NCBI GenBank assembly: GCA_977017575.1
Contig: CDRNVI010000040.1
Coordinates: forward strand, 1 to 64,000
Length of the DNA stretch: 64,000 nucleotides
Direction of reading: 5' to 3'
DNA from: Paramoeba atlantica
Lineage: Eukaryota > Protista > Discosea
The notes beneath the pieces are model-generated. The model worked only from the letters and a program-made list of their open reading frames with translations. It was not told the origin of the DNA and did no database searches. This document shows, in pieces, positions 3,135-62,786 of the stretch (positions are counted from its first letter, which is position 1; every line of letters begins with the position of its first letter). A program made the position numbers and the translations under genes.

Positions 3135-3304
3135 TAAAAGTTTACGAAAAGAATTGTACAATGGAAATTTTGATTTCTGAGAATTATATTTACGTTAGTT
3201 GGCCGACGGGCATTGTACGTTTGTTATTCATAAACTAGTTTATATAGTGACACAAAGCATTATACAGTGAACTGGTAATAGAGCGCGTTTTTATCCTTTG
3301 AAAC
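3135..3304 (+). repeat. Split direct repeat A1 of V1 (170 bp)
   Basis: Matches 7519-7688 (TAAAAGTTTACG...CCTTTGAAAC). Confidence 0.9.
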
Positions 3305-3333
3305 GATAAAGATACAGTTTCTGTACCTTGTTG
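3302..3333 (+). other. Spliced-leader exon relic (AACGATAAAGATACAGTTTCTGTACCTTGTTG)
   Basis: Contains the kinetoplastid SL core GATACAGTTTCTGTAC and ends in TTG; no GT intron follows; gag ATG is 30 nt downstream. Confidence 0.85.
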
Positions 3334-3362
3334 TTGTTTTTGAAACTTTATCTTATCCTTTG

Positions 3363-4430
3363 ATGCCTCCGTCGCCGCGTAGCTCCATAGAGGCACGGAG
3401 AAGCGTGTCCCGTGAACCTTCAGTGGTACCAGACAACCCCATGAGTAGAGAAGAGTTGGCCGTGGTGAAGACGAGAGTTTGTGAGCAACTGCTTCTTTCC
3501 CGCGATCAGAATCCTTCGTTGCACATTAAGGCGGCATGGAATCGGAAGAACGCGGCGACTTCGGCGAAACAAATATCCCACGGGAAAGTACGTCGAGTCG
3601 GGATGGAAATGTGGGCGGTATGGGAAGAGGAGCCAGATCGAGAGTATCCATTTCCCCACAAAGAGTTAAATTACTATCGCATTGATCTAGAAGACGGACT
3701 GGGACACTCGAGCGAAGGACAAGAGTGTGCGTTGGAAGGCGGACGGCCCCTGCCTATTAACGTGCAGCCCTTTGGATCTGTAGCGACCTACAAGATTGAT
3801 CCGTATGAACCTGTGACTTGGCCGGGGCATATAGATCAACGCAACGACGACGGCTTTCGAATTAAGGACCTTTTTCGAGAATTAAAGGAAGCTCCCGAGT
3901 ATGGTTTGAGATTGAATCAATATTATCAGGACAAATCATTTCAGATGCAACAGGAGCGGAATTTCGATCAGTTGCTGGGAAAGTGGATATTGTTGGCACG
4001 CCAAACTCCCGGCTGGAATGAAGGTCCGTTTTTGGAGTTGGGGAAAGCGATAATCCAAAGTCTACGTGATGCTTACTGGCGTGCTTGCAAGGTAGACGTG
4101 GAGGCGGTTCACCGAAAAATGGACAAAGATGATCGGGCGCACGACAAATTCTATCAGCATGTAACAGATCAGTTGAGTGAGCGTGAAAAGCAACGTAGTC
4201 GGTACACTTCTTTCTCTGCGCTACGACGAACAGGGACATATTTCGGAGGAGGATCAACAGGTCAATATTCACAATCGTTTCGCCCCTCGTACGGAACTTA
4301 TCGCGCGCAATGTTACAATTGCAGATCACCAGACCATTTGATTAAAGATTGCCCATACAAACGCACATCACCGCCGGATTTTCGTCAGCGGACGGCTGGC
4401 AACGCCCCCCAGGGCGGAAAGTCGTTATGA
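3363..4430 (+). CDS. Gag-like protein of V1
   Basis: CCHC knuckle CYNCRSPDHLIKDC near the C-terminus; YDPVTW-type motif (YEPVTWP) shared with V2 gag. Confidence 0.8.
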   Translation: MPPSPRSSIEARRSVSREPSVVPDNPMSREELAVVKTRVCEQLLLSRDQNPSLHIKAAWNRKNAATSAKQISHGKVRRVGMEMWAVWEEEPDREYPFPHKELNYYRIDLEDGLGHSSEGQECALEGGRPLPINVQPFGSVATYKIDPYEPVTWPGHIDQRNDDGFRIKDLFRELKEAPEYGLRLNQYYQDKSFQMQQERNFDQLLGKWILLARQTPGWNEGPFLELGKAIIQSLRDAYWRACKVDVEAVHRKMDKDDRAHDKFYQHVTDQLSEREKQRSRYTSFSALRRTGTYFGGGSTGQYSQSFRPSYGTYRAQCYNCRSPDHLIKDCPYKRTSPPDFRQRTAGNAPQGGKSL

Positions 4431-5594
4431 AACGCCCGTCCATTAATCGCCAGTGTTCCTCGAGTCACATACACGCGTATAGATCCAGGAACGAACATCT
4501 CGCATACAATACCCGCCAAACGCGGCAGAAGCAAAGCAGTCAAATACAAGAGGATACATCCAGGGGATCAAGGGGAGAGTGTAGCGAAGAGAACGCGAGT
4601 GATACAAGGGGGTGTAAAAAATGTGAAAGACTCGAATGGAAGATCAATTGCTTGTGGAAATTTGTACCAGGGAACATTGAGCCTGGAATGCAGGAGTGTG
4701 GCTCGGAAAAATCTTTTGAGTCTGTTGATGGGGGTAAGCAGGATTACTCCCGAGGTACGCGTGGCATTGGACGCGATGTCCGGAATGTGGAGCTCGTCGA
4801 CGTGTGAGACACGAGCAAGGTTGTGGGAAAGGTTCCTGGTATATTGCACCGGGAATCATATAAGACAGACACCCCTTCACGCAGTGACGTTCGTGCAACT
4901 TCTGCCAGTGTCAATACAAACCAAGGTGTCCTACGGAAGGGCGCTAATGACCTTATTCAACCTGATCGGATTAAATACTGTCCCAATAAAATTCTTTTGC
5001 AAAGCTCTTCAGGCACAAGGAGCAGAGGAGCCAGTACATCAAATGCAGCCGTTGACACCATTCCTACTGAACAAGATACGAAGAAGGTGCACCCAATCCG
5101 AAAGTCAAACATTGCTGATGTGCTGGAAGGCAGCATCCCGTTGGTCCGAAACCGCCAATTTGACCAAGGACAAATTCGTGGAAATATCACCGCAAAAGGT
5201 TGTAATTGCTTGGGGAAGGGGGACAAAGGCTACAAGGTGCAACCCGTGGCGCGAATCGATGTACACAGTCATCCAGGGCCAGGGCACAATCGAATTGGCT
5301 CAATACGTAAGTACGCTCAGGTCATGGGATCGAATGTGCCGGACAAATGTGAGAGAGATGGACAGGAATATAAAGAGGGTTCTGGGAGAGGGTTTCGGCA
5401 CACATTCCGCCAAGAGAGGAGCGGTAACGCAATTATTCCAGGAAGTTGTCAAGGGGACAGTGGGAATCGAAGATGTGAAAAAATTAGCGAAGCACCAGCA
5501 GATCGAGTCCCTGTTGCGTTACAATTCAAACCCAGTTACCACCGCGCTAGCTCTAGGAACGGGGAAGGCGACAGCCAAACTGAGGACGCTTTAG
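4431..5594 (+). CDS. Tyrosine recombinase of V1 (frame open from directly after the gag TGA; true start uncertain)
   Basis: CWKAASRWSE (R), GTHSAKRGA (HxxR), KH...LLRY (H, Y) catalytic motifs. Confidence 0.85.
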   Translation, partial: NARPLIASVPRVTYTRIDPGTNISHTIPAKRGRSKAVKYKRIHPGDQGESVAKRTRVIQGGVKNVKDSNGRSIACGNLYQGTLSLECRSVARKNLLSLLMGVSRITPEVRVALDAMSGMWSSSTCETRARLWERFLVYCTGNHIRQTPLHAVTFVQLLPVSIQTKVSYGRALMTLFNLIGLNTVPIKFFCKALQAQGAEEPVHQMQPLTPFLLNKIRRRCTQSESQTLLMCWKAASRWSETANLTKDKFVEISPQKVVIAWGRGTKATRCNPWRESMYTVIQGQGTIELAQYVSTLRSWDRMCRTNVREMDRNIKRVLGEGFGTHSAKRGAVTQLFQEVVKGTVGIEDVKKLAKHQQIESLLRYNSNPVTTALALGTGKATAKLRTL

Positions 5595-5596
5595 CA

Positions 5597-7243
5597 ATGA
5601 AGGAGTTATTTCGAGAATATTTGCGGGACATGCCGCAGGAAAAGCATCGATACACGATTGTACGTACCAGACGTACGACAAAATTGGCCACGGAGGAAGA
5701 TTTAAAGCTACCACTGCACGTAAAGAAAATTCCCAAAATGGATGTCAATGAAATTGAGAACATGATGAATGGAAGTACAAGAAACCGGTTTAGAGAAACG
5801 TTGAATACTTTGTTGGATCGGAGGAAGAAACCCGATAGTGAGCCAAAGGTAAATCCACGATTGAACATGGAAGATATTAGTCATTTGCTAGACGCACGTA
5901 TTGTTTCGCGTGTTTCCCCTGAGGAGGAGAACAAAAGACCATCCAATCAATGGGTGATACCGTTCACAGTAGTTGAGCCTGCGGACGATAAAGGGGAAAC
6001 GGAGAGGCGGCGCTTCATAGCCTGGACGAAGGAGGATAATGAGCGAATTAAGAACGAGTACATGCCGCACGTCCCGTTAAAACACGCGGCTTATTATCTC
6101 CATCGAGCGCAGGAAGCTTTTGGTGTGAAGCGTGACCTGACATGTGGATTTTATCAAGTACCGATTCCGGTAGCAAGTAGAACAAAATTTCGATTTCGCG
6201 CAGTAAACGGTGAGTTGTTTGAACTTAATGTGATGCCAATGGGGCACCGGTGCGCCCCGGAACTGATGCACACCATTACATCCACAATCGCAGGAGATCC
6301 GGAGTATTGCAGAGCCGAGACGGCGTATACAGAACAGTTTAAGGTCGATGTATATGTGGATGGATTGAGAAGTGCAGGTTCACTAGACCAAGTTCAGCAG
6401 TATACGGAATTTGTGGAAACTCGCGCGGAGAAAGTTAACGCCACGTTTAAGGATAAAGAAAAGGAGCCCATGAAGCAGTATGTTTTTAATGGCGTGGAAT
6501 ACAGCCATACCGAAGGTAAGGTAAGAATGGGACCGAGGATCGTGAAAAAGATGCAAGGCGATACTTTTCGGAATGCAACGTACGGAAAACTAGAATCAGC
6601 TGTGGGTAGATTAGTCCATGCATCAGCAGTACTGGGAGAACCCGTTGCCAATTACCACTTCACCTTAAAATTAGTGCGGCGCCGTATAAATGCGTTAAAC
6701 AATGATCCGACATTATTGGATGTGAAGGTTCATCTTCCCCCCAATGTAACCATGGACTTGACGCGATGGAAGAAAAAGTTGATTTCAAACATATTCGTGG
6801 CGCCGCCGCCTCATCCCGACACTGTACCACATAGCCACGTTTTGTATACGGACGCTTCGTCAAAAGGTTGGGGAGGAATAATATATTTGGACCACGGTTC
6901 CGTGATATGTGTGGGAGGTCGCTGGGAAGATGATTTCGATTATGAAGTCAATCGAGCGGAGACGAGGGCCGTTCGTCTCGCGTTCGAGAAATTGTCGCAC
7001 CATTTTCAACGAGGTACCTGCGTAGACCTATTTATTGATAATACATCATGCTTAGCTTCCATATGCAAAAAATCGACCAAATCGGATGGAATAAATATCG
7101 AATTGATAGGTTTACTTAAGTTTTTAAAGAGACAGGGTATAATAGTACAGCCGCATTACATTCCGTCAAAACTGAACCCTGCGGATCCAATAAGCCGAGG
7201 AGGATGGGATTGCGACAATGTGGCGAAAGGGGTGAAAGATTGA
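5597..7243 (+). CDS. RT-RNase H of V1 (frame also open upstream to 4823, overlapping YR)
   Basis: KRDLTCGFYQ, PMGHRCAP, YVDG; RNase H motifs LYTDAS.GWG, NRAE..AV, IDNTSC, NPADPISR. Confidence 0.85.
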   Translation: MKELFREYLRDMPQEKHRYTIVRTRRTTKLATEEDLKLPLHVKKIPKMDVNEIENMMNGSTRNRFRETLNTLLDRRKKPDSEPKVNPRLNMEDISHLLDARIVSRVSPEEENKRPSNQWVIPFTVVEPADDKGETERRRFIAWTKEDNERIKNEYMPHVPLKHAAYYLHRAQEAFGVKRDLTCGFYQVPIPVASRTKFRFRAVNGELFELNVMPMGHRCAPELMHTITSTIAGDPEYCRAETAYTEQFKVDVYVDGLRSAGSLDQVQQYTEFVETRAEKVNATFKDKEKEPMKQYVFNGVEYSHTEGKVRMGPRIVKKMQGDTFRNATYGKLESAVGRLVHASAVLGEPVANYHFTLKLVRRRINALNNDPTLLDVKVHLPPNVTMDLTRWKKKLISNIFVAPPPHPDTVPHSHVLYTDASSKGWGGIIYLDHGSVICVGGRWEDDFDYEVNRAETRAVRLAFEKLSHHFQRGTCVDLFIDNTSCLASICKKSTKSDGINIELIGLLKFLKRQGIIVQPHYIPSKLNPADPISRGGWDCDNVAKGVKD

Positions 7244-7258
7244 CTGGCGAAAGGGTGG

Positions 7259-7979
7259 TCCCCGCGTGGACACCCGTTCGAGAAAGGGAGGGAAGGGAGT
7301 TCTCTCCAGGAAAAAGTTCATGAGGTATATAAAATAGATTTGATACTTACTTCGCGAAGTTGATATTACAGTACTGGTGAAGATAATGTCTTTTACTCTG
7401 TTGTCCATGATGGATGTTATATTTCGGTAGCTCTGTAGTTCTACAGATTAAACATTACAGTTTACATACGCTTACTATATCTGATTGACTATATGTTTTT
7501 CTTCCGGAAGTGCAATTCTAAAAGTTTACGAAAAGAATTGTACAATGGAAATTTTGATTTCTGAGAATTATATTTACGTTAGTTGGCCGACGGGCATTGT
7601 ACGTTTGTTATTCATAAACTAGTTTATATAGTGACACAAAGCATTATACAGTGAACTGGTAATAGAGCGCGTTTTTATCCTTTGAAACTTTTTGCCCCAC
7701 CCACCAACCCCCAAACCACTCCCCGCGTGGACACCCGTTCGAGAAAGGGAGGGAAGGGAGTTCTCTCCAGGAAAAAGTTCATGAGGTATATAAAATAGAT
7801 TTGATACTTACTTCGCGAAGTTGATATTACAGTACTGGTGAAGATAATGTCTTTTACTCTGTTGTCCATGATGGATGTTATATTTCGGTAGCTCTGTAGT
7901 TCTACAGATTAAACATTACAGTTTACATACGCTTACTATATCTGATTGACTATATGTTTTTCTTCCGGAAGTGCAATTC
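7259..7979 (+). repeat. B1-A2-spacer-B2 block of V1
   Basis: 260-bp B repeated at 7259 and 7720; A2 lies between them, followed by a C-rich spacer (CCCCACCCACC...). Confidence 0.9.
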
Positions 7980-8177
7980 TAGTAAGACATGCGCGAACCT
8001 GGCAAAAGAAGCAATAAAACGGAAGCATCAAACATACGTAGAATCAGGAAAGATCCCTGACGTAGCTTTCCAATGCTTGCCGGTTTTTTCTTGCGGATCC
8101 TTGCATCAGAACACCCGATTCCTCATCCATGCTTTGGCGGACGCTGCGTGCCTTGATCGCCACAGAACAGAGAAAAA
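7980..8177 (+). pseudogene. CRE family I RLE fragment, right half (continuation of 2810-3134)
   Basis: SKTCANLAKEAIKRKHQTYV..FQCLPVFSCGSLH..LIHALADA matches CRE C-termini. Confidence 0.75.
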
Positions 8178-8209
8178 AACGATAAAGATACAGTTTCTGT
8201 ACCTTGTTG
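8178..8209 (+). other. Spliced-leader exon relic at the 5' end of CRE-A
   Basis: Same 32-mer as 3302; followed by a 41-nt UTR and ATG at 8251. Confidence 0.85.
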
Positions 8210-8250
8210 AATTGTTGTAAGATCAACCTTTTTATTAAGATCTTTTTGTG

Positions 8251-8402
8251 ATGGGCATGTTCACTCGGAGCCGAGCGAAAGATACTGGAGTAGCTCCAGT
8301 TGTCCAGCCTCTGCCAACGACCCGCCGCAGGAAGAAACCTACGGAGGAACGGCCTCGGCCGGCACCGTCTGAATCGCGAGCAACTGGACCGCCGCCGCTT
8401 GA
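8251..8402 (+). pseudogene. CRE-A ORF piece 1 (MGMFTRSRAK...GPPPL)
   Basis: ATG follows the SL relic; cut by the LINE1 insertion. Confidence 0.7.
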
Positions 8403-9354
8403 CCTTTCCTTATTGTAAGACCTTTCCTTATTGTAAGACCTTTCCTTATTGTAAGACCTTTCCTTATTGTAAGACCTTTCCTTATTGTAAGACCTTTCCT
8501 TATTGTAAGACCTTTCCTTATTGTAAGACCTTTCCTTATTGTAAGACCTTTCCTTATTGTAAGACCTTTCCTTATTGTAAGACCTTTCCTTATTGTAAGA
8601 CCTTTCCTTATTGTAAGACCTTTCCTTATTGTAAGACCCTTCCTTATTGTAAGACCTTTCCTTATTGTAAGACCTTTCCTTATTGTAAGACCTTTCCTTA
8701 TTGTAAGACCTTTCCTTATTGTAAGACCTTTCCTTATTGTAAGACCTTTCCTTATTGTAAGACCTTTCCTTATTGTAAGACCTTTCCTTATTGTAAGACC
8801 TTTCCTTATTGTAAGACCTTTCCTTATTGTAAGACCTTTCCTTATTGTAAGACCTTTCCTTATTGTAAGACCTTTCCTTATTGTAAGACCTTTCCTTATT
8901 GTAAGACCTTTCCTTATTGTAAGACCTTTCCTTATTGTAAGACCTTTCCTTATTGTAAGACCTTTCCTTATTGTAAGACCTTTCCTTATTGTAAGACCTT
9001 TCCTTATTGTAAGACCTTTCCTTATTGTAAGACCTTTCCTTATTGTAAGACCTTTCCTTATTGTAAGACCTTTCCTTATTGTAAGACCTTTCCTTATTGT
9101 AAGACCTTTCCTTATTGTAAGACCTTTCCTTATTGTAAGACCTTTCCTTATTGTAAGACCTTTCCTTATTGTAAGACCTTTCCTTATTGTAAGACCTTTC
9201 CTTATTGTAAGACCTTTCCTTATTGTAAGACCTTTCCTTATTGTAAGACCTTTCCTTATTGTAAGACCTTTCCTTATTGTAAGACCTTTCCTTATTGTAA
9301 GACCTTTCCTTATTGTAAGACCTTTCCTTATTGTAAGACCTTTCCTTATTGTAA
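8401..9354 (+). repeat. 18-bp tandem array (GACCTTTCCTTATTGTAA) x53, 5' part of LINE1
   Basis: 954 bp = 53 units; one substitution visible near 8640. Confidence 0.97.
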
Positions 9355-12300
9355 TCGTTATAATAAGGCCATGGATACCTCCGGCACGGTCAATGAGAGA
9401 AAGCGGTGTTCTGACCCGGTTGCTCTTATTGGTCGGTCCAGGTTAGGTCGGGGCGTCAATTTTTGGCCATCAAAGTCAAAGGTTGGCGTAGCAAAACTCC
9501 GTGATCGTGCGGTAACCAGTATGTCCAACACGATTCGTGCGGGGTCTCGTGTCGCTGTGGTCTGGAGCTGGTCGTTTGCTCAAAGGCTAAAGATGTGGCA
9601 AGGGACTGCGAAATTTCGGGCCAAAAATGGTCTATGGCGTATTCGCTATGACTGTTGTCCTGGAGTATCGTTTCCTTTTCCCCCTATAGACCAACGAGTA
9701 GCGATCTGTGCGGGCCGCGTGGCACCCCCCCGTAAGAAGAAATGTAGGAAGCACCGTTCTGCGCGACTTCCCCGTCGGAATGGCTCCCCGGCGGTCGAGG
9801 AATCTAACCCCATTGCCACGAACAAGACGCTACATCTTGCAACTCTAAACGTCACTACCCTGAAACTAAAGGGAACTGATTATTTCTCCCTTCGCAAATC
9901 GACACGACTACGGGAAATTATGTCGTACATGGTCGAGCGAGGCCTTGCCCTCTGTTGCCTTCAGGAAACTCGTGTACAAACCGATATCATTCAAAACATT
10001 GCACATCAGACAATTCGTCATGGAAAGTTCGTATTTCATGTTTATATTCAAGGCGCTATCAAAGGTTACGGTGGACTCATGATTCTAAGCCTATTTGAGC
10101 CTGCTCTTGTGTCGCGAATCAGTGATCGGATCCAACAGGTTACTCTAGACTTACCAAAATTCCACGGTGTGCTATTCAATGTTTATGCCCCCACGGCGGT
10201 GGCAAAAGATGACGTAAAGGAGAAATTTTGCAATGATCTACGTGATGCATGGTATCTTAGTAATGCGAAAATAAAACTTGTTCTGGGGGATCTTAATGCG
10301 CCACTGACAGATAAGTGTCAGCAAATAATGCGTAAAAATAAGGCACAACATCGGCTTACCAATTTACTGTCTGAGCTTGGGGCTCGCGCGGCACATACAT
10401 CCTGCCCAAGCAGAAAGAAGTGGACTTATACTTTTCAAAATGGAACTGTAAAACAACTAGACCATATTCTTGTCAACAAACGTTTCGTCACTACCTTACA
10501 TGGCCACAGAGTTCTCCAACCCCCGGTGCCGACTCGACATCAAATAGTAACAGTAAAAACTAAGTTTCGTTGGAAAGCTTCAGTAAATGACGGTAGCTTG
10601 CGATTACCGTGGTATCAGTTAAAGGATCCACAAATATGTATGGACTTCATACGCCGTGTGAAAGAGAACTACACCGAACATGCGGAGATAGTTGGGATGA
10701 AAAGAAGACGAAATGAGCCAAACCAGAAAATGTCAACCGAAATGCCTGTGATATTTCCAAGTGATATTTTGTTGGATAAATTGGAAAAAGCAATTATCAT
10801 GGCTGCTGAATCTATACCAACGAAGGAGGAAAACATAAACATGTTTGCTTCAAACGATGAAACTACTACACAGTTGCGAATCCGTGACATTTTCCGTACG
10901 TCTCAAAGTCCGCAGAGGTTCGATTCTCTAGTAAAAGAACATAGCATCACCGTGAATGAAAATATCACTCAAGAATGCCTGTCTCTACAACAAAACTTTC
11001 AAAGATACAAACGTTCTTCTTGGAGACATGTTAAAATGATGGCTGGGCACACTTCATCACGCCTCAGACCGCCAGGAAAAACAAAAAGCGAACAATTATG
11101 TAATGTGCGATTACACTTTCAGAATACTGTGCAACTAAAGGAGGTAGACAACAAGATCAAATTTGCGGAAGCGCCAAAGTCGTTTATCCCTATATCTGAT
11201 GGACCGTTTGATCTCAATGAATTGACGACTGCTCTTAAAGATATGGCAACTGGTAAAGCACCAGGCATTGACTCGATTCCAATTGAAGCCTTACGAGTAC
11301 TGAACAGCGATCCGTTCATACAATCTATTCTTCTACATTTAATTAATATGGTTCGTGAGAGCGGAAGAGCTCCACAGACATGGAAACGAGTTATCCAAGT
11401 CCCAGTTCCGAAAAAAGGCGACTTAGGCAACATAAACAATTGGAGACCAATATGTCTAATAGTGCACGCTGCAAAACTCATGAACCGTATGATACTAAAT
11501 CGAATTCTTCCTACAGTGGATGCTCAATTAAGTGATTGTCAATACGGATTCCGACCCAATAGAGCAACAACGGGAGCACAAGCAACCCTCATTGAGTTGT
11601 GCCAGAAAGCGTCTCGTGAGAATCCTGGTGTTGCGCTAGGCTTCGTGGATTTCCGTCAGGCATTTCCTTCAGTCAGCTTTTTCTCCATTCGTGCTGCACT
11701 GGAAGCCTTTCACATCCCGCAGCATCTCAGCAGCATGATAATGTCTATGTATGAAAAAACAGAAGCAGTTGTACGATGCAAAAGCGGAGTTACTGATACG
11801 TTTCCGATCCAGTGTGGCACACTTCAAGGTGATGTTTTGGCCCCTGTCCTATTCCTCATGGTTCTGGATCGAGTCATGGCTGAAGTGTATAAGGAAAATG
11901 AGTTCGGACTTATCTTGCGAAGGGCGGGCACAAAAAGACAAGGAAAGCCTGCGCAATGTCTAAATTATTTAGCATACGCGGATGATTTAGTGCTCATATG
12001 TCCCTCTCTTACTAATTTGAATCGCGTTATGGAAAGACTGGAACAAACAGCTGCGAAAGTCAACTTACGTCTCAACATTGGTGTAAATAAAACTGCGTGG
12101 ATGGCAGTAGGTCAAGTGAATGACGCACAAGGTGACTTGATTCTAACGAATGGGGGGTTGGTGCCTCGAATCACCGAATATCGATACTTGGGGTTGAAAA
12201 TTACTAATAAGGGTGTCATTGTAAACTTTGAAGACCGAATTAACTTAGCGTGGGCTGCAACACATCGCCTACAGTCATTATGGAAATCAGGCCTCACGCT

Positions 12301-14111
12301 TGTCACAAAATTTCACTTATTCGAATCTCTGGTTTCACCTTTATTGCTGTATGGCTGTGGAAACTTTTCCCTAATAAAAAAAGACGCTGATTTAATTGAC
12401 TGTGAAGTGAACCGAATGAGAAGACTAGCGCTCGGGGTTCGTACTTGGGATGGTAAAAGAGGTACACCATGTGATGCACTATATGGGAACAGAATGCGAC
12501 TTTCTAACGCATGTCGAGTCCTCCGAGTTCAAATGCTAGGACACCTGATCCGCGGCAATAATCCCTTCAAATCGGTAATGCTATGGCGCAAAGCAACAAG
12601 AAAGAAATATCGTCCCACTCTATCAGAGGCATGTGCTGAAGACATGTAACTAGATGTCGAAGATCTCAATGTCCTAGCGGGAGATCGGGATTGGTGGGCG
12701 TCGAGAGTTAAATTTTTGCGTGAATATCTTGAATCTCACAAATCCTACATGGTTTTCGGCTCTAGATCCTGGAAGAAGGTATGCCAGGAATTAGATACTA
12801 CCACCTACAAAGTACTCGAAGGAATTGAAGAAGGCACGGACCATTCTCCTCTCTCAGCTGATTCCGAACACATATACGTAGATGGGGCTGTCAGTTCAGA
12901 AGCAGGAAAACCAGCCGCGGGTTCGGGGATAGTTATTGTTAATTCAAATGGTGTAAGAACCAGACAACACGTTTTACCACCGGAATGCACTTCACCGGAT
13001 CGGGCTGAACTTCGCTCCTTTCTTTTAGGCATTCAGGCAGCTTCGTCTTCTACGAGGAACACAGTTATACATACTGATTCTCATTATGTATGGGACTGGT
13101 ATCATAATGTTAGGGTTCGTTTTTCAATCATTGGATACGGTGGCATGCCAAATGCTGACCTACTCACGCAGATACAAGGAGCAATTAAAGAGCGTTGTAC
13201 AGGTAGTAGTCTCTACGTTATTAAAGTGCGGGCACACTGCGGGAATTCCTTCAATGAAAAAGCTGATGAAATAGCACGCAAAGCACAGAGAACAGCTGCA
13301 CGTCGTTTTTCATGCGTCATTCACACGCAAAGGGAGGGAAACAAATCTAATCACGGTCAAAAAAGGGAGCATGATCTCCAAGAGAAATCTCCACACAAAG
13401 TGAATATGAAAAAAGGGAAACTGAAAAATACAGAAGAAGGCAGCACAGTCAGGATTGCTCGTTCACTCAACCCAGGAGCTAATACCGGGGATCCAGTAAC
13501 GTTTTCTCAGTACAAGACATCACGGGGTAGACTGACGAATGCCCCCATTTTTGTGAAGAAAAGCCGCTATATGTAATCGAAATTTGCTGTGTATAACTTT
13601 GCGCATTAATCTGGAACGCTTATTTTCAGGAGTGTTATGTCCTCTTGGTACATTTATTTATCAACGCGTTAATAATATTCTGGAGCATTTATGTATATTT
13701 CATTGCTAAATATCCGTACTCATCGAAAACACTGAGTGGGATACGTAATATTGATAGTATACGGTGGTTTATTTGGCAAGCAGAGAACAAGTTGGCGCTG
13801 AGTTGCTCTTCGGGCATATGACGCGGCAATGAAGGCAAGAACTTGCGTACTGCTTAACCCTTGGTACCGCGTTGAATATCGATGGTGAAATATTGAGCTG
13901 AAAATGGCTAATTGTAAGATTGTTCTGGTTTTCTTGTGCTCGTTTGTACACGTTTTCTCCTAATTGCAAAAGAAGATAGGTCTCCTACCTCCATTCGCAT
14001 AATCCGCGGTTTGGCCTATTCGTGATGTGGATAGATGTTTCAGTGCGCTAAGGAGAGTGTACGTTGAAAGTTGCATGTGTATAGTCTTTTGTTATTATTA
14101 TTATTATTATT
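8403..14111 (+). mobile_element. LINE1: RTE-like APE-RT-RNase H non-LTR retrotransposon with 5' 18-mer array and (TTA)n tail
   Basis: CTTGA duplicated at 8398-8402 and 14112-14116; (TTA)n at ~14092-14111; single ORF. Confidence 0.85.
9371..13576 (+). pseudogene. LINE1 polyprotein (small N-terminal module, APE, RT, RNase H); one in-frame TAA at 12647-12649
   Basis: APE: ATLNV, LQETR, FNVYAPT, GDLNA, QLDHIL; RT: KAPGID, NWRPICL, QYGFRP, QGDVLAP, YADD; RNase H: YVDGA, RAEL, HTDSHY, VRAHCGNSFNEKAD, in the same frame after the stop. Confidence 0.85.
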
Positions 14112-30414: not shown

Positions 30415-30430
30415 TTTCTGTACCTTGTTG
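30415..30430 (+). other. 5'-truncated spliced-leader relic (TTTCTGTACCTTGTTG) at the 5' end of CRE-B
   Basis: Abuts the left target duplication; pyrimidine-rich UTR and ATG at 30460 follow. Confidence 0.8.
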
Positions 30431-30459
30431 ATTTTTACTACTTTGCTTTTCTTTCTTTT

Positions 30460-33400
30460 ATGTCAGAACCTCCCCCGAGGGCGGCGCAAGGCACGCCGTC
30501 GCATCCGCAGCAGAACACTGCAGCAGTGAGGTCCACTGACGTAAAGGAGCACAACTTGAACTTTACGGAACAAGCGAATAGACACGAGATTGGATCATGG
30601 GACCAGTTTGAGGCAAACAAGAAACTCATCCAAGACGCTAGCACGTACGACGACCTCATGTACACAACCCCCATTCCGCAGCATATTCCCCTCAACTGGC
30701 AAAAGAAGATGGAACACAAAGCGCAAAGCATCGAGAAAAACCCAACGTCAGACCACGGCCGCCACAACACGAAAGACGAGGAAACCGCTTTTGCCAGTGT
30801 TCGGAGAAATGAAATTCTACGAAGAAGTCAAACTGGAGAGTCATCCTTGAAAATTAAGATCAGAAAAGAGACACGACTGAAGAAAACTCCGAAAAAGATA
30901 AAAGTGATACTCCGTAGCTCTGATCTAACGAAGGCGAACCTCGGACAAGCGGACATGTCACATGACGAAGGATCGGAGAGCTCATCTGCATCAGGATCAG
31001 ACATCTCGGAGGACGATCGGGTGGCCGAGGTCGCCGAAGAAACAATGAAAGCTCCGGACCAAATACTAAAGATAATCAACGACTGGGGAAAAGGAACTAC
31101 TTGCGAGCTACATTGGAAATTCCGCCACAGCAGTGAGATTTATCAGTCGATTGGAGAAGTTGTTACGCGACATTCTAGAAAAGGTGCAATCAGGGTAAAG
31201 ATTTCCTACACACCGCAGCATCAGCCAGGTCCATCAGGATTTCTATATCTACCTGCATCTCACAAGATTAACATCTTCCGATTACGGGTGGTAAAGCTCA
31301 ACCGTATTGTGACACAAACGCCATTTTTGGATATCGAAGAAACACAAGATTGTGACACGGGATGCGACTTGGAGCTTCTTCCCCCACTCGCCCACATCGA
31401 CCCCACGTTTGCCGCTCACGTCATAGCAATCTTTAGATCAATCCTGCGAGGATATCCCACGCTCAAGCTTATAACAGAGAAAACATCCGTCTGGCACAAG
31501 TTTCTAAACGCACCCCGCGACTCACTCACCACTGTGCGACAAGCGATCCAGCGGAAGTATCATGTGCCAAACAAATTGCGCAACGAGGAGCCGGCGTTCT
31601 CCTCACCTGACGAGAAACTTGAACGTGAAGTCGACCGCCGATCAATCCGCAGTGCGCTTCGAACGGCTAGGGCTGGTAACCTAAGCAAAGCTACGCGTAT
31701 CCTCGACAACGTATATTTTGACTCGAACCTTAGCGTTGAGGAGAAAGTAGCGGAGCTCAAGAGTCTACATCCCGATGGAGAGCGCCCACAAGCTCAGACG
31801 GACGCAGACCCCCGAACAGGAATCATCGAAAAACACGAACTTCGGGCCGCGATAGAGAAACTGGCTCCGGGAGCTTCCCCGGGCCCTACGGGATTGAGTG
31901 AAGCCATGTTGCGCCTACTTGCGGATGACGAGGAATCCAGCACCGCGCTCTGCCATATGTAGTGAACGGGGAGATCGCATCGTCGGTGCGTGACAGACTG
32001 ACACGATGTCGACTAATGGCCATCAACAAACCGCAGAACGGAATACGACCGATTGCAATTGGGGAGACTCTATTGAAAGTATGTGGCTCGATCCTTCTAA
32101 ACAGGAACGAAGAGAAACTGAAGAAATTTTTCCAGCCTGTCCAAAGAGGGATCCTCCAAAAGAATGCGTGCGAGGGAATTGTTCACGAGGTGCTCGATGA
32201 ATATGACAAGGGACACGCCATCTTGGCGATCGATTATAAGAATGCCTACAATACCCCCACGCGTCAAGCAATCTTCGAAGCACTCAAGAAAGACGGCATC
32301 TTCAAGCCTTTCATGCGGATTTTTAATCTTGAGTACGGGGACTCGTCTGATCTGCTCTTCTTTGCCAATAACTCGCCCCATTCGATCGTGAAGAGCACTT
32401 CTGGCGTTCGACAGCGCTCAGCGCTTTCGTCACTATACTTCTGTGCCCTGATACAGGATTCGCTCAAAGAAATCGAAGAGTCCTTTCCAGATGTAACGGT
32501 TCGAGCGTACATGGACGACATAACCTTGTCATCAACAAATCCCCTATCCTTGCAGACCGCCTTTCTACACCTGCACGAATCTTCACGACTTCTGGGACTG
32601 GAAATGAACTTCCAGAAATGCGAATGGTTCAAGAAAACAGACACTCCATGGACGCCCCAAACTCTGCAAGCGATGGGGGTAGCCTGCCCGCAAGAAACAG
32701 TGAAAATTCTAGGTGCATATATCGGACAGGACGAGATGGTAAGTGAATGCCTAAAGAAAAAGATGGACAAACACAAGTGTCTCTTTCGCCGTCTTCGACT
32801 CATGGGACCGAGCAACCTATCCCTCGCAATTCTGAATCGGTGCGCCATCCCCCGTCAAGACTATCACCTCCGAGTACACAAGCCCGAAGCATCCCTTGAA
32901 ATCGCCCAGCAGTTCGACGCGGAAGTAGGCAGTATTATTCAGCATTGGTTTAATGCAACGGGCCCTACTGCAAAACTCGCCACACTTCCGCAATATCTCG
33001 GCGGACTCGGACTTACTCCGTCATGTTTGAAGCAAAAGCACTTTTTCCAAGCGTCTCGCAAAGCCATTGAAGAGCAATCCAAAACCAATAACGCTCCGGT
33101 GGTCATAGCGGGATCCAAGCGAAACAGGGCTCTGAACGAACGTGGCAGCCAGAAGAATGATACTTCCAAGCGATTAGTCATGAAAGCAATACGATCTGAA
33201 CAAAAACGATTTGCAACCGAGCTGAGAAAGGACATGCGCCTCAAAGAACTAATGGAGCGAGGATCCGCATCATTTCACCACCTGCAATCAACCAGCAACT
33301 ACATCAATCCGTACCTCTTCCGTTTCTGTATAATGATGCGCCTGGGAATAGTGCCAGAAAATATGCCTAAGAGTGTGGTATGCCCGGGATGCCTGACAGA

Positions 33401-34022
33401 ATATTCTTCTGATACCATCTTCCAGCACATTCCTGGATGTACACAATGCTGTGGGATAAATGCAACGAAGAAGCACACACGATTAGTCCGTTTCCTAGGT
33501 GAATTGTGTGCCAAAGCAGGGGTGCCCCATGTTATAGAACCTCGAGTACATTCATCATTCTTCTGCACCAAATGTAAGGCCACCATATCCGAAGAGCTCT
33601 CTGAACATCACCCATGCAGAGCAAGACGTATGCGATCAGGCCCTGATCTCGGTATCATGTGGTCCCATCTCGGAGAAATTCTCTACGATGTCACCGTAGT
33701 TCACAGTTGTGCCCCGAGCTATGCCAAAACCTCCGTCGAGCAGTTAATCCAAAATGCCCTTGAGCGCAAGCACAAAAAATACGTTGTACAAGGAGGCATA
33801 CCGAAAGAAAGTTTCAGCTGCTTGGCAATGACCGAATTAGGACAGTTGCACAACAACACGAAAACTCTCATTGTCTCGCTCGCACAACGGTCACAACAAA
33901 ACGTGAAGGATGTCAAAGAAGCGTTCCAACTTGAAATAGAGAAGATGAACGCGTACACAATTGCCACGCAACTCCGACAATACTTTCCACCAATTCAGTG
34001 GCTCGGAGGACTTGAACACTAA
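30460..34022 (+). pseudogene. CRE-B polyprotein: LsmAD-like domain, N-terminal module, RT, RLE; frameshifting deletion near 31958
   Basis: WDQFEAN..STYDDLMYTT; GASPGPTG; RPIAIGE; YMDD; RSGPDL; YDVTVVH; homologue CHMLLDVVNG vs CHM*..NG here. Confidence 0.85.
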
Positions 34023-34445
34023 TCAGAATTTCCTTTCACTTACAACCTCTATTTGATTTGATAAAATTCCCCGTCATCTCCGTTGATATCATCTCATGAT
34101 CTAAGTTGATATTAACTTATTTCAGATAAAGAGCTCATGGAGAGTATTGCTGCTGTTAATGTCTGTACTTTTCTCAATATGCTTTACAATAGGAGGAACC
34201 AAGGAGTGAATTTTGTTTGTTTGGAGTGAATTTTGCTTGTTTTAATAGCTTACTCATTATTCATTCTTCGCTTGGCATGTAACTCAGCCGTTATGGAAAA
34301 AGATATTTTATGTATAAAATGGTTTTCTATAGACGCAAATTAAGAAAATTTCATGTTGGAGTTTCTTGAACACACAACATTCTATAAATTGAATTCATAG
34401 TACAGATACTCCAAATTGTAACGGGGCAAAAAAAATTTGACTGTG

Positions 34446-52000: not shown

Positions 52001-52144
52001 TTTGATTGCTTATTTTCAACTCGTATACCCCCCCCAATGGACCTACTTGGTTCGTCTACTGGGTCAAAATATAGAGGCAATGCCGCGATTCATACTCCTC
52101 CCCCCTTATTAATTGCAAAAAAAAAAAAAAAAAAAAAAGACAAG

Positions 52145-52176
52145 AACGATAAAGATACAGTTTCTGTACCTTGTTG
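52145..52176 (+). other. Spliced-leader exon relic at the 5' end of CRE2b
   Basis: Same 32-mer; ATG at 52221. Confidence 0.85.
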
Positions 52177-52220
52177 AATTATTTTTATTAACCCACTATT
52201 TTCCCTAGCAGGGTCTCACC

Positions 52221-55200
52221 ATGCCACACGACGACCTCTTCGATGCGAATGCAGTACCCATGGACGACGACTCTTTCCGTCAGGAAGAAATTTCGCACAA
52301 CACGGGTGCTTGGGACCAATTTGCAGGAAACGCACATTTAATTCCCGGTCAGAGCTCCTACGATGAACTCTTGTACACAACACCGATTCCCAAACATATC
52401 CCCAAACACTGGGCAAAAAGAGCCGCCAAGATCGCCGGAGAGGCTCCCACGCCGGACACGGGAAGAATGACGGAAGATGAAGAGACGAATCACTCCCTCG
52501 TCGTGGAAGCAAGCCCGAGAAACACACCGGAGGTTCCTGACGCCCAAGTACCTTCTCCAAACAAGGCCTCGAAGCGCAAGAACATAAATCCGGTACCGAT
52601 CCCGCAGCACTGTACTCAGCGCGTATGCCCAGCTGAAGGATGCACTTGGAAGACTCCTCCTCACGGTGGGCAATGGCAAGCATTTTACAATCATGTGGCC
52701 CACCGACACGGAGAAAGCGTACCAACCACTTGGTGGGAGGGGGAGGGAAGATTTCTTTGCAAGGACTGCTGCAGGCACTACGATAAGAACAAGGAGAATT
52801 CTCACCCCAAACAGTGCAAAGGCCGTAACCACCCCGTGCGATCTCAAACCCCACCTAGGCCAACGACAAGTCTCGAAAATGCAACTGAAATTCCTCCAGA
52901 AAACATGCTACCAACGTTGAGCTCTATCTGCGCGCTGCCCATAAGCACATGCAAAGATGTCCCCCATTCCTGTAGGTTTCTATGGGCGAGCATTTTGACA
53001 CAGGTCATGACATCTGCTGTGCAAGAAAACACAGTGGAGGCATGGACGTTACTGGCAATGCTCCCTAAATGCGTCTTACCTGCACCTTACCGAGGCGGTC
53101 GCAAAGGACACACGTCATACTCTACATACGTGGAAAAAAGCATGGAACTCTGGCTAGAAGGGGAGTACCTCTTGCTCTGGGAACAGGCCCTAAAGGATCA
53201 CGCCAAAAAACGCTCCAAGCCTAGAAGTTCCGAAAATGAAGAAGAAAGAGCGGCAATCAGGGCAGAAATACTGTCACGTCAAGGGGAATACTCTAGGGGA
53301 ATAGCCGCTCTAACCGCAGCACCCATGGCGCCGGACAACGAGGAGACCCTTGCGAAGCTTCTAGAAAAGCACCCAAATCCTCACGAAAACCCACTTGAGA
53401 ACGATCTTCCACCGATTGAGGGTAATCCCCTGCGTCTGGAGGAAGTGGAAGTCAGGAAAGCGGTCGAAAGTTTTCGCAGAGGGTCTTCTGCCGGAACAAT
53501 GGGTCTACGTCCAGAACACATCCAGGCCGCCATTTTGGAACACGCCAACAAGAAGGTGGGTCCTCTTTCGTCCCTCACTCGCCTCGTGAACCACATGCTC
53601 CAAGGAAAGGCACCGCCAGAGGTACAACTGTTCTACGCTGGAGCCCGTCTCTGCGCTCTGGAGAAAGGTGAAGAAGATGTCCGACCCATAGCAGCAGGCG
53701 AAACCCTCAGACGTCTAGTAAGCAAAGCGGCATGCGTCGCCGTAAAGGAGAAGGCTGAAACTTTATTCCGGGGAAGACAGTATGGTGTGGCTGCATCCGC
53801 GGGGGCCGAACGAGTAATTCATCTGTGCCGGAAAACAATGCTAAACAACATGGGGAGCGACAGTCTTGTTCTCTGTAAGGTAGACCTCAGAAATGCGTTC
53901 AACAACGTCAGCAGGCCTGTCTTCACTTTGCTCACACGTCTCAATTTTCCAGAACTTTCACCCTGGGTGGAATGGTGCTACACAAACCCGAGTTGTCTTA
54001 CCTACGGGAATCACTTCCTATCCTCAGCCGAAGGCGTCCAGCAAGGTGACCCATTGGGTCCGCTTCTCTTCTCTCTAGTCCTTTCTGGGGTAACCGAGGA
54101 AATATCATCCCGATCAAACCTAGATTCGCAACTATGGTATTTGGACGACGGAGTTCTCATGGGGGAGGCGGCGGAGGTTCGAAAGGCGCTTGATGTTTTT
54201 TCCGAGGTTGGTTCACAATGCGGGCTATTTCTGAATCCGAACAAGTGTGAAATAATAACGCCACCTGCCTCAGCCCATCACACGACTTTATTTCCGGAAA
54301 TACCTACCGCCAAAATTCGTGTTGACGGGAATTTCGATATTCTCGGATCCCCGATTGGGTCTGCGGAGCACTGCGCGGAGTTCCTAATGTCTCACGCCAT
54401 CGAACCCGCACGCGAGACTCTCGCAGCAATAGGGCTAATAGGCGATCCACAAGTTGCCATCGCCCTCATCCGCCAGTGCACTGGCTTCTGCCAAATGGTG
54501 TACGCTCTCCGCACCACACCCCCCCAGGCTCTTTTTCAACTTTGTAGCCTACTAGACGAAACCGTTCTTAAAGCTGTCGAGTGGGCACTTTTCCCCCTGG
54601 AACCCCACGCACGTGACCAAATCCAACGAAGGAAACGCCACGGAGGTTTCGGCCTTAGGTCTGCAACACTCCACGCGACAGCCGCTTACGTTTCTTCCGT
54701 CGCGCACGCCGCCGACATAGACGACTGGGATCCTACAGAGGCTGATGGATTCGCCATTTCGGTACAAGACGTAAACCGTAAAGCAGGAGTAGCGCTAGTG
54801 GATCCCAACACGGGGCGCACACCCAAGCAGGACAAGCCACTCCCATACTCAGGCCACCATCACAACTTCCTCCCGAAAAGGAAACGCCCACGGAGCACTC
54901 AAAACAAAATGGAAGCGGACAGGGCAACCGCGCCGGAGATGGTCATCCCTCGACAGCAGCAACTCAGCCAGGCTATCTCACAGCAGGAATTCACCACAGC
55001 ATACGAGCAGGCTGACCCTCGCACTCGCGCACGGTGGGTTTCAGAGTCGGGTAAGGGAGCAGGTAGCTGGGCTTTCGTGACGCCCTCTAGGAGCAAAGGA
55101 TACGCCTTCACACCAACAGAGTTCCGCACGCTGTCCCGCTGGTGGCTGGGATCCGACATCTATCAAGAAGATCGCCCTTGCCCAGCGAAGGGATGCATAT

Positions 55201-62731: not shown

Positions 62732-62757
62732 AAAGATACAGTTTCTGTACCTTGTTG
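62732..62757 (+). other. Spliced-leader relic at the 5' end of CRE2c
   Basis: AAAGATACAGTTTCTGTACCTTGTTG after an A-run; ATG at 62787. Confidence 0.85.
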
Positions 62758-62786
62758 ATTTATTTTCTTAATCTTTCTCACGTTCC

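What the first reader, a model, noticed from the sequence alone, without database searches (positions are those of the whole stretch)
8178..8250. Five element copies begin with a spliced-leader relic: genomic cDNA copies of SL-bearing RNAs
Seen: the SL-like sequence occurs at 3302, 8178, 30415 (16 nt), 52145 and 62732. Each is followed by a different 29-44 nt AT/pyrimidine-rich UTR and an ATG, and never by a GT intron. At 30415 it sits directly against the target duplication of a complete insertion. Established: GATACAGTTTCTGTAC is the kinetoplastid SL core, and CRE/SLACS/CZAR are known for inserting into SL RNA genes. Inference: these elements are not in SL genes but carry the SL at their own 5' end, from trans-splicing or from transcription out of an SL-gene insertion. 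Its presence in a YR element favours trans-splicing.
Basis: partly seen in the sequence, partly recalled or inferred. Interest (0 to 1): 0.85.

Follow-up and report, generated by a model that had tools for sequence, protein, structure and literature searches.

The report
Retrotransposon copies tagged by spliced leader
Full-length copies of three unrelated kinds of retrotransposon in this euglenozoan genome carry the host's spliced-leader sequence just upstream of their first gene, which marks them as DNA copies of mature trans-spliced mRNAs; dinoflagellate retrogenes carry a similar tag, but it does not seem to have been described for mobile elements of this group.

Summary
The SL-like 16-mer occurs five times in the window, all on the + strand, against about 0 expected. 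Each copy sits 29-44 nt upstream of the start codon of a retroelement ORF.

An independent metagenome contig holds a genuine SL RNA gene next to a 5S rRNA gene. Its exon ends ...CTTGTTG|GTATGAG, exactly where all five window copies diverge. The window contains no SL intron.

The tagged elements belong to three mechanistically different orders:
- a VIPER/TATE-like tyrosine-recombinase element;
- an INGI-like APE LINE;
- three CRE/R2-like RLE LINEs.

Contigs from the same or a very close genome add 13 more relics. Their 3' boundary is constant and their 5' extent varies (38 to 13 nt). All are identical to the SL, although the leaders behind them have diverged. One window copy is a clean 4,029-bp insertion with an 8-bp target duplication.

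Best explanation: reverse transcription of trans-spliced element mRNAs.

Corrections: in the YR element the relic lies inside the element, after terminal repeat A1. Most relics abut the poly(A) tail of an upstream element.

Unresolved: no AG acceptor and no SL-less source copy was seen, so how the junction is renewed is unknown.

I rate this a new variant of a known kind.

The parts
3135..7981 (+). E1: VIPER/TATE-like tyrosine-recombinase retroelement. A1 3135-3304; SL relic 3302-3333; leader 3334-3362; gag (zf-CCHC) 3363-4430; YR ORF 4599-5594; RT/RNase H ORF 4823-7243; B1 7259-7520; A2 7519-7688; 31-nt spacer 7689-7719; B2 7720-7981.
   Evidence: A1=A2 and B1=B2 at 100% identity. Pfam zf-CCHC and RVT_1. 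YR: 8 of 52 homologues hit PF00589; conserved R181, K210, H269, G274, H299, Y308; AF2 pLDDT 90; Foldseek top hit is Cre recombinase, E 7e-8, TM 0.6. Architecture matches VIPER/TATE as drawn in PMC12278014.
3302..3333 (+). SL relic 1 (32 nt, SL nt 7-38). It lies between repeat A1 and the gag leader, and AAC is shared with the end of A1/A2.
8178..8209 (+). SL relic 2 (32 nt), preceded by an A7 run. This is the relic of the reported finding.
8210..13576 (+). E2: INGI-like LINE. Leader 8210-8250; ATG 8251; 18-bp tandem repeat 8401-9354 that breaks the reading frame; APE+RT ORF 8300-12649; RNase H ORF 12716-13576. The 3' end was not determined.
   Evidence: Pfam Exo_endo_phos, RVT_1, RNase_H. N-terminus MGMFTRSRAKDTGVAP is shared with the intact SL-tagged copy in L006.
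30415..30430 (+). SL relic 3 (14-16 nt), abutting and overlapping the left copy of the target duplication.
30417..34445 (+). E3: CRE/R2-like RLE LINE, 4,029 bp. Leader to 30459; ORF1 30460-31962; RT-RLE ORF2 31962-34022. It is flanked by the 8-bp duplication AAGTGATT (30409-30416 and 34446-34453), inside the gag ORF of another YR-type element.
   Evidence: Removing it plus one duplication copy restores a 513-aa ORF with a CCHC knuckle. RVT_1. RLE motifs.
52145..52176 (+). SL relic 4 (32 nt), preceded by the A22 tail of the upstream element (52117-52138) plus the filler GACAAG (52139-52144).
52177..56106 (+). E4: CRE/R2-like RLE LINE. Leader 52177-52220; single 1192-aa ORF 52221-55799 (N-terminal LsmAD-like motif, RT, C-terminal CCHC/RHN/RPAD/D..V RLE); 3' UTR homology extends to about 56106.
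   Evidence: Pfam. Best solved relative is R2Bm 8gh6, E 4e-7. RLE alignment. 3' UTR homology.
62732..62757 (+). SL relic 5 (23-26 nt), directly after the poly(A) tail of the upstream RLE LINE (60117-62734).
62758..64000 (+). E5: 5' part of a CRE/R2-like RLE LINE. Leader 62758-62786; ATG 62787; the ORF stays open to the window end.
   Evidence: 99.4% identical to L004 2232-3500, whose full copy has LsmAD+RVT_1 ORFs and a longer (36-nt) SL relic at the same junction.

Best explanation
These are genomic cDNA copies of retroelement mRNAs that had received the host spliced leader by trans-splicing. In this euglenozoan, retroelement transcripts, like other Pol II transcripts, get the capped ~38-nt SL (AACTTTAACGATAAAGATACAGTTTCTGTACCTTGTTG) joined upstream of a short pyrimidine-rich leader. 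When the element's reverse transcriptase copies such an mRNA to or near its 5' end, the new DNA copy keeps the SL. It usually lacks the first 0-7 cap-proximal nucleotides and is sometimes truncated further. Shown here: the identity of the relic with a real SL exon, the constant 3' boundary at the exon end, the variable 5' extent, the presence on three element orders, a target duplication, and the absence of the intron. Inferred: that trans-splicing of the element's own pre-mRNA supplies the SL, that cap-4-type modifications cause the cap-proximal stops, and, for the YR element, that repeat A1 was rebuilt from A2 after the cDNA reached the SL.
For: (1) A genuine SL RNA gene with a neighbouring 5S rRNA gene has an exon identical to the relics, and its exon|GTATGAG boundary is exactly where all relics diverge. 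(2) There are 5 relics in the window and 13 more in 9 loci of ENA assembly ERZ24900291, which holds 99.2-99.4% identical copies of window elements. All are in sense orientation 26-46 nt before an element ATG. (3) The 5' extents are 38, 37, 36 (x4), 35, 34 (x2), 33, 32 (x3), 26, 17, 16 (x2) and 13 nt, with a fixed 3' end. Two copies of one family (window E5 and L004) share the junction but differ in SL extent (26 vs 36 nt), so these were independent events on SL-headed RNA. (4) The relics have no mismatch to the SL, while the leaders behind them differ between families. That argues for resupply from the host SL rather than long-term inheritance. (5) The tag is on APE (E2, L006), RLE (E3-E5 and others) and YR (E1) elements. 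(6) E3 is a clean insertion with an 8-bp TSD and a truncated relic. (7) There is no SL intron in the window. (8) One locus (L009 3758-3835) carries stacked relics whose inner 16-mer starts right after the SL's only AG, as expected if a relic-bearing transcript were re-spliced.
Against: No RNA data were available. The junction ...TTG|leader has no AG, so a daughter copy cannot be re-spliced at the same place. Yet related but divergent RLE families keep the junction at the same position of homologous leaders. Every one of 17 leader-bearing copies in 229 kb has the SL, and no SL-less, AG-bearing source copy was seen. The leaders are 72% pyrimidine and 11 of 17 lack any AG, against a background probability of 0.10; plain trans-splicing does not explain this. 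In E1 the relic is internal. The stacked relics can also be read as RT slippage, since they form 16-mer and 10-mer tandem duplications.
Confidence: 0.78

Rival explanations
1. The SL relic plus its pyrimidine-rich, AG-poor leader is an inherited functional 5' module of the elements. It might act as an internal initiator/promoter mimicking the SL RNA gene. Or it might be a homology patch that lets the reverse transcriptase switch onto SL RNA or another mRNA and so 'heal' a full SL each generation. On this reading the tag is not simply a passive scar of trans-splicing.
For: The junction position is conserved across divergent families with homologous leaders. No SL-less source copy was seen and no AG lies at the junction. 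The leaders are AG-depleted. In trypanosomatids the LINE 5' end Pr77 is an internal promoter that binds the factors TBP and SNAP50 (PMC8190864, PMC1874656; abstracts).
Against: Relics truncated to 13-26 nt and differing fillers show that many tags are simple 5' ends of cDNA. Zero mismatches in the relics fit resupply from the host better than vertical inheritance. A promoter-only model predicts erosion and inherited filler nucleotides, and neither was seen. No functional data exist.
Confidence: 0.12
2. The SL was captured without trans-splicing of the element RNA. The reverse transcriptase, on reaching the 5' end of an unspliced element RNA, jumped onto a free SL exon (a trans-splicing intermediate) or onto SL RNA.
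For: Template jumping or capture of host RNA clearly occurs in this genome. A complete SL intron copy with an A-tail sits after a poly(A) at L004 7420, and 8-9-nt intron snippets sit at two other poly(A) junctions. Fillers of 0-6 nt lie between the poly(A) and the relics.
Against: A jump onto SL RNA would bring the intron between SL and element, and this is never seen. The SL|leader junctions show no filler, and are the same in both same-family pairs seen (window E5/L004; L005 7185/9964), unlike the poly(A)|SL junctions. The free exon intermediate is rare (general knowledge).
Confidence: 0.06
3. This is ordinary SL-gene association as in CRE/SLACS/CZAR. Source copies sit in SL RNA genes at the exon/intron boundary, are transcribed from the SL promoter, and spread from there.
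For: E3-E5 are RLE LINEs of the R2/CRE type, a group known for SL-gene targeting (PMC12278014). One poly(A) in L004 is followed by an SL intron.
Against: The same exact boundary would have to be hit by APE, RLE and YR elements. The flanks upstream of the relics are poly(A) tails, repeat A1 or a disrupted gag ORF, not SL promoters. No element in the window is followed by the intron. The L004 intron copy has its own A-tail and no SL-gene context. SLACS-type insertion is inside the exon (nt 11/12, from memory), not at its end.
Confidence: 0.03
4. This is an assembly or library artefact, with cDNA concatemers mixed into a genome assembly.
For: Poly(A)-SL-ORF-poly(A) chains superficially resemble concatenated cDNAs.
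Against: There are no adapter sequences at the junctions. The contigs are 10-123 kb and contain truncated, nested and interrupted elements, a TSD-flanked insertion, 100%-identical split repeats around a YR element, and minisatellite arrays. The same families occur at different loci with different flanks.
Confidence: 0.01

Closest known systems
Dinoflagellate DinoSL relics in retrogenes ('mRNA recycling'; Slamovits & Keeling 2008 from memory; PMC5585692, PMC6050394, PMC12014239 seen)
   Same: A DNA-encoded spliced-leader remnant at the 5' end marks a copy as reverse-transcribed from a mature trans-spliced mRNA. Stacked relics can arise from re-splicing, and one possible stack was found here (L009).
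   Different: Here the tagged sequences are the autonomous retroelements themselves, of three orders, not host genes. The host is a euglenozoan. This SL ends in TG, not AG, so relics do not provide an acceptor at their end, and stacks are rare (1 of 18).
Dispersed partial SL exons in Diplonema papillatum (PMC10161547, supplement section 4) and Papus ankaliazontas (PMC7859406)
   Same: Those papers report hundreds (Diplonema) or about 80 contigs (Papus) of partial SL exon sequence outside the SL-5S arrays. The Diplonema authors guessed 'collateral damage of retrotransposon mobility'.
   Different: Neither paper gives any anatomy. Here each relic is shown to be the 5' head of a specific retroelement copy, with junctions, truncation series, a TSD and poly(A) adjacency. 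The SL sequence differs from both species.
CRE / SLACS / CZAR elements of trypanosomatids (and NeSL-1 of nematodes, from memory)
   Same: E3-E5 share the RT plus C-terminal CCHC/RLE layout and the poly(A) end (PMC12278014). They are also associated with SL sequence.
   Different: Those elements insert at one fixed position inside SL RNA genes. The elements here are outside SL genes, carry the SL exon up to its 3' end on their own 5' side, and mostly sit in the poly(A) tails of kin.
INGI/L1Tc with the Pr77 internal promoter (PMC1874656, PMC8190864)
   Same: E2 and its L006 relative have the APE-RT-RNase H layout. They face the same problem of expression in a polycistronic genome.
   Different: L1Tc makes unspliced transcripts from its own 77-nt promoter. 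E2-type copies instead carry an SL tag, which implies trans-spliced templates. A second APE LINE in the window (44759) has no SL at all.
VIPER/TATE (DIRS-order YR retroelements; PMC6681497, PMC12278014)
   Same: E1 has gag, overlapping YR and RT/RH ORFs, split direct repeats A1...B1-A2-B2 at 100% identity, and no visible TSD.
   Different: An SL relic sits between A1 and the gag leader. No such feature is mentioned in those papers.

Membership tests
SL-relic-tagged retrocopy (mRNA-derived insertion) | The 5' tag is identical to the host SL exon and ends at the exon's 3' end, without the intron. | tested here: met
   All 18 relics perfectly match the exon of the SL gene in L003 up to ...CTTGTTG. 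There is no intron in the window. Caveat: L003 comes from a related species, and the host's own SL gene was not retrieved.
SL-relic-tagged retrocopy (mRNA-derived insertion) | Variable 5' truncation with a fixed 3' boundary, including within one family. | tested here: met
   Extents range from 38 to 13 nt. Window E5 (26 nt) and the L004 copy (36 nt) share the same junction.
SL-relic-tagged retrocopy (mRNA-derived insertion) | Insertion hallmarks: 3' A-run and target-site duplication. | tested here: met
   E3 has the 8-bp TSD AAGTGATT and removing it restores the host ORF, although 10 nt follow its A8 run. The L005 chain elements each end in A26-A29. Other TSDs cannot be read because the insertions lie in poly(A).
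SL-relic-tagged retrocopy (mRNA-derived insertion) | The corresponding transcripts are trans-spliced at that junction. | not testable with these tools
   No RNA data were available.
CRE/SLACS/CZAR clade | RT followed by a CCHC + restriction-like endonuclease; poly(A) 3' end. | tested here: met
   Invariant C..C..H..C, (R/K)H(N/T), R..D and D..V.H columns in six C-termini. The best solved relative is R2. Poly(A) tails are present.
CRE/SLACS/CZAR clade | Insertion at one fixed position within SL RNA genes. | tested here: not met
   The flanks are poly(A) tails or other elements, and there is no SL promoter or intron.
CRE/SLACS/CZAR clade | Phylogenetic placement of the RT within the CRE clade. 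| not tested
   No reference CRE sequences were at hand.
INGI/L1Tc clade | APE + RT + RNase H in one element. | tested here: met
   Pfam hits in 8300-12649 and 12716-13576.
INGI/L1Tc clade | Pr77 hallmark at the 5' end. | not tested
   No Pr77 reference sequence was available. The 5' end here is SL plus a 41-nt leader.
VIPER/TATE (DIRS order) | Tyrosine recombinase ORF overlapping RT/RH, preceded by gag. | tested here: met
VIPER/TATE (DIRS order) | Split direct repeats A1 ... B1-A2-B2; no TSD. | tested here: met
   A1=A2 (170 bp) and B1=B2 (262 bp) at 100%. The flanks ...aacatt and gtaaga... are not duplicated.

The most novel reading that the evidence does not exclude
The SL relic plus the pyrimidine-rich, AG-depleted leader is a self-renewing 5' module. 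It lets promoter-less retroelements of a polycistronic genome regain a pristine SL at the same junction every generation. Possible routes are homology-guided template switching onto SL-bearing RNA, collapse of tandem SLs, or rare source copies whose relic end has mutated to an AG acceptor. In addition, the RLE elements preferentially integrate at poly(A)/SL-relic junctions of their kin. That would be a plausible evolutionary stepping stone towards the strict SL-gene specificity of CRE/SLACS/CZAR.
Probability: 0.18. Interest if true: 0.85.

Novelty: new variant of a known kind. Interest (0 to 1): 0.62.

Why it matters
First, it gives a built-in marker for full-length, mRNA-templated retrotransposition in a euglenozoan. 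That allows genome-wide counting and dating of events and separates spliced from unspliced templates.

Second, it shows that elements using three different integration chemistries all use trans-spliced mRNAs as templates. This is a different answer to the 'no promoter' problem from the Pr77 internal promoter of trypanosomatid LINEs.

Third, it explains the unexplained scattered SL fragments reported in the Diplonema and Papus genomes.

Fourth, the cap-proximal stop positions are a natural record of where reverse transcriptases stall on the modified SL cap.

Fifth, the link between CRE-like elements and SL sequence outside SL genes bears on how SL-gene specificity arose.

Sixth, abundant reverse transcription of spliced RNAs is the activity invoked for RT-mediated intron loss in kinetoplastids (PMC11613528).

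Tried and rejected
- Literature search for the exact SL 20-mer found nothing.
- Rfam found no family in the window at gathering thresholds.
- Exact-protein look-up of a window ORF found nothing. The window contig itself is apparently not indexed, so relatives were reached through homologues.
- Pfam and PDB sequence searches on the YR ORF alone were blank, and the single-sequence AF2 model failed (pLDDT 36). The question was resolved with a 52-sequence alignment.
- PDB sequence search of the E4 C-terminus was blank. RLE status therefore rests on motif conservation.
- A second copy of the E1 family (L007) was fetched to look for an SL-less 'source' 5' end, but another repeat has replaced its 5' part.
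- A search for leaders without an SL found none in 229 kb.
- I tested whether the element upstream of poly(A)-preceded relics is always RLE-type, which would favour SL-targeted insertion. It mostly is, but RLE elements dominate these contigs, so the result is not discriminating.
- The idea that the leaders are 5'-transduced flanks was rejected. Leaders of related families are homologous.

Full report
OBSERVATION

The 16-mer TTTCTGTACCTTGTTG occurs five times in the window (3318, 8194, 30415, 52161, 62742), always on the + strand, with 0.01 expected by chance. The longer GATACAGTTTCTGTAC occurs at four of these sites, with 0.00 expected.

Extending each match against the full SL gives relics of 32, 32, 16, 32 and 23-26 nt, ending at 3333, 8209, 30430, 52176 and 62757. 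After ...CTTGTTG the sequences differ. An ATG follows after 29-44 nt and opens a retroelement ORF. The reported span 8178-8250 is relic plus 41-nt leader in front of the ATG at 8251.

IS IT THE SPLICED LEADER?

One scan of JGI metagenome contigs with the 23-mer found a single contig, L003 (Ga0316204_10168667). On its minus strand it reads ...gtagtAACTTTAACGATAAAGATACAGTTTCTGTACCTTGTTG|GTATGAGAAGCTTCGAAC....

- A 5S rRNA gene (98 bits) lies 400 bp away.
- The rest of the SL RNA, including a stem-loop, sits at the other end of the contig. The contig is therefore one unit of an SL-5S tandem array.

This is a genuine SL RNA gene. Its exon/intron boundary is exactly the point at which every relic diverges. 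The SL resembles that of Diplonema papillatum (AACCAACGATTTTAAAAGCTACAGTTTCTGTACTTTATTG; PMC10161547 supplement) and those of kinetoplastids, but it was not found in the searchable literature.

The window contains no piece of the SL intron.

WHAT THE TAGGED ELEMENTS ARE

The window is almost entirely retroelements.

E1 (3135-7981) has the following parts:
- a gag ORF with a zinc knuckle;
- a 331-aa ORF whose homologues hit Phage_integrase (8 of 52) and which keeps the R/K/H/R/H/Y set; with an alignment it folds at pLDDT 90, and the model matches Cre recombinase (E 7e-8, TM about 0.6);
- an overlapping RT/RNase H ORF;
- split direct repeats A1...B1-A2-B2 at 100% identity.

This is the VIPER/TATE layout (PMC12278014).

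E2 (8178 onward) is an APE-RT-RNase H LINE of the INGI type. Its start MGMFTRSRAKDTGVAP is shared with an intact SL-tagged relative in L006. In the window copy an 18-bp tandem array breaks the ORF.

E3, E4 and E5 are related LINEs:
- they share an N-terminal LsmAD-like motif (GSWDQFxAN);
- their RT is closest to R2 among solved structures;
- they carry a C-terminal CCHC/RHN/R..D/D..V restriction-like endonuclease.

They are therefore CRE/R2-like.

MORE COPIES

A homologue 99% identical to a window LINE led to ENA assembly ERZ24900291. Nine loci from that assembly (165 kb) carry 13 further relics.

All 18 relics share these properties:
- each is in sense orientation, 26-46 nt upstream of an element ATG;
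- each ends at the exon end;
- none has a mismatch to the SL.

Their 5' extents are 38, 37, 36 (x4), 35, 34 (x2), 33, 32 (x3), 26, 17, 16 (x2) and 13 nt. Window E5 and its 99.4% identical relative in L004 share the junction but carry 26 and 36 nt of SL. Each 5' end was therefore formed separately on an RNA that began with the SL.

The clustering of starts within the first 7 nt fits reverse transcriptase stalling at a modified cap. This is an inference. The Diplonema authors note the same effect in RNA-seq.

E3 is a clean 4,029-bp insertion. Removing it together with one copy of AAGTGATT restores a 513-aa gag-like ORF.

MECHANISM

The simplest account is that element mRNAs are trans-spliced like other mRNAs of the organism and that these mature RNAs are the templates for new copies.

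A tag at the identical exon boundary on elements that integrate by APE, RLE and tyrosine recombinase rules out a shared target-site explanation. The absence of the intron and of SL-gene flanks rules out ordinary SL-gene insertion. The perfect conservation of the relics, next to leaders that have diverged between families, argues that the SL is resupplied from the host rather than inherited with the element.

In E1 the relic lies inside the element. A1 and A2 both end ...cctttgaaac, and the relic continues ...gataaag, so AAC is shared. I infer that a trans-spliced RNA lacking A1 was copied up to the SL, and that the cDNA then moved to the A2 copy by microhomology and rebuilt A1. This is in line with the repeat-annealing model cited for such elements (PMC6681497). 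It is not shown.

WHAT DOES NOT YET FIT

The junction TTG|leader has no AG, so a daughter cannot be re-spliced at the same site. Three further points add to the problem:
- related RLE families keep the junction at the same place of homologous leaders;
- every leader-bearing copy in 229 kb has the SL, and no AG-bearing source was seen;
- the leaders are 72% pyrimidine (background 50%), and 11 of 17 lack AG (background probability 0.10).

Possible answers are rare source copies (for example a relic end mutated to an AG), homology-guided switching onto SL-bearing RNA, or collapse of tandem SLs.

One locus (L009 3758-3835) carries a stack: partial SL, then 35-nt SL, then a 16-mer, then a 10-mer, then the leader. 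The 16-mer starts right after the SL's only AG. That is what re-splicing of a relic-bearing transcript would give, as in dinoflagellates. However, the stack can also be read as slippage duplications.

ARRAYS

Twelve of the 18 relics are preceded by an A-run of 7-29 nt belonging to an upstream element. Between them lie 0-6 odd nucleotides (GCAG, GAT, GC, ACT, GGATC, G, GACAAG). Further related structures were seen:
- poly(A) tails are also followed by a 5'-truncated element without SL (window 38832-38857);
- L006 holds stutter arrays of 3'-UTR fragments;
- in L004 a poly(A) is followed by a complete SL intron copy with its own A-tail, and two other poly(A) junctions carry 8-9-nt intron snippets.

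These head-to-tail chains explain why nearly everything in the window is on one strand. They could arise by insertion into poly(A) tails, by end-to-end template jumping, or by RLE targeting of SL relics. I could not separate these possibilities.

PRIOR KNOWLEDGE

- SL relics as tags of retroposition are well known for dinoflagellate genes.
- Scattered partial SL exons were noted, without anatomy, in D. papillatum ('collateral damage of retrotransposon mobility') and in Papus ankaliazontas (about 80 contigs).
- The VIPER/TATE and trypanosomatid mobilome papers I read do not mention SL relics.
- Trypanosomatid L1Tc uses an internal promoter and makes unspliced RNA.

I found no description of autonomous retroelements carrying the SL in their genomic copies. 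The searchable library is incomplete, however.

The closest named relatives of the E1 recombinase are from Papus, a prokinetoplastid, at about 35-40% identity. The host is an unidentified euglenozoan with the kinetoplastid-type element repertoire.

VERDICT

This is a new variant of a known kind, of moderate to high interest. A real open question remains about how the junction is maintained.

Noticed in passing
L004:7398-7497: A complete copy of the SL RNA intron (GTATGAGAAGCTTCGAACTCT...CCCCGGTTCCCGAGAAGGGAACTGGGGCTTATT) with its own A7 tail sits after a poly(A) tail, with no exon. Short 8-9-nt intron snippets ((A)TGAGAAGC) sit at two other poly(A) junctions (7055, 7398). The trans-splicing by-product, or SL RNA, is evidently also reverse-transcribed. 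Compared with L003, the intron stem differs by paired changes on both arms that keep the pairing.
   Followed up: partly
L009:3758-3835 (also L002 around 4119 and 15177, minus strand): Stacked SL relics: partial SL, then 35-nt SL, then the 16-mer TTTCTGTACCTTGTTG, then the 10-mer TACCTTGTTG, then the leader. L002 has a degenerate run of GTACCTTGTTG-like pieces. These arose either by re-splicing at the SL's internal AG or by RT slippage.
   Followed up: partly
window:40513-44747 and 8401-9354: Two large arrays of 18-bp tandem repeats sit in or at LINE 5' regions. (TTAAGACCACTTTTTGTA)n, about 4.2 kb, lies directly upstream of the SL-less APE LINE at 44759, and its unit matches that LINE's own 5' end. 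A different 18-bp unit (about 53 copies) breaks the E2 ORF.
   Followed up: partly
window:44732-49060; L001:9974-12532: A full-length APE-RT-RNase H LINE whose two copies both begin at CTTTTTGTATTAATACG, 27 nt before the ATG, with no SL relic. Not all LINE families here use SL-tagged templates.
   Followed up: partly
window:57608-59083, 24595-25230, 14859-15080, 29698-29875; L007:1601-2021: A unit of about 419 bp is present as tandem copies and as single pieces in front of YR-type gag ORFs. It is also inserted inside an E1-family copy in L007. It is probably the terminal-repeat or SIRE-like part of another YR family.
   Followed up: no
window:38832-38857; L006:269-4300: A poly(A) tail (A25) is followed directly by a 5'-truncated E5-like copy without SL. 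L006 holds a stutter array of 3'-UTR-only fragments, each ending in poly(A). Poly(A) tails are preferred junction points for new cDNA.
   Followed up: partly
window:52221-52500, 30460-30800, 62787-62900: The RLE LINE ORFs start with a conserved GSWDQFxAN...YTTPIP motif that gives weak hits to the ataxin-2 LsmAD domain. This may be an RNA- or PABP-related module in ORF1.
   Followed up: no
L005:14423-14432, L010:4839-4848, L009:9882-9891: Three relics read (A)CTCTTTAACG... instead of AACTTTAACG.... This is either a host SL variant with an extra CT or recurrent misincorporation at cap-modified positions.
   Followed up: no
all 17 leaders (window 3334-3362, 8210-8250, 30431-30459, 52177-52220, 62758-62786 and the loci): The leaders between SL and ATG are 72% pyrimidine (background 50%), and 11 of 17 contain no AG (background probability 0.10). 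10 of 17 begin with AATT.
   Followed up: partly
window:3290-3362: The gag leader after the E1 relic (TTGTTTTTGAAAC TTTATCTTATCCTTTG) contains two imperfect copies of the end of repeat A (GTTTTTATCCTTTGAAAC). This may be a footprint of how A1 was rebuilt next to the SL.
   Followed up: no
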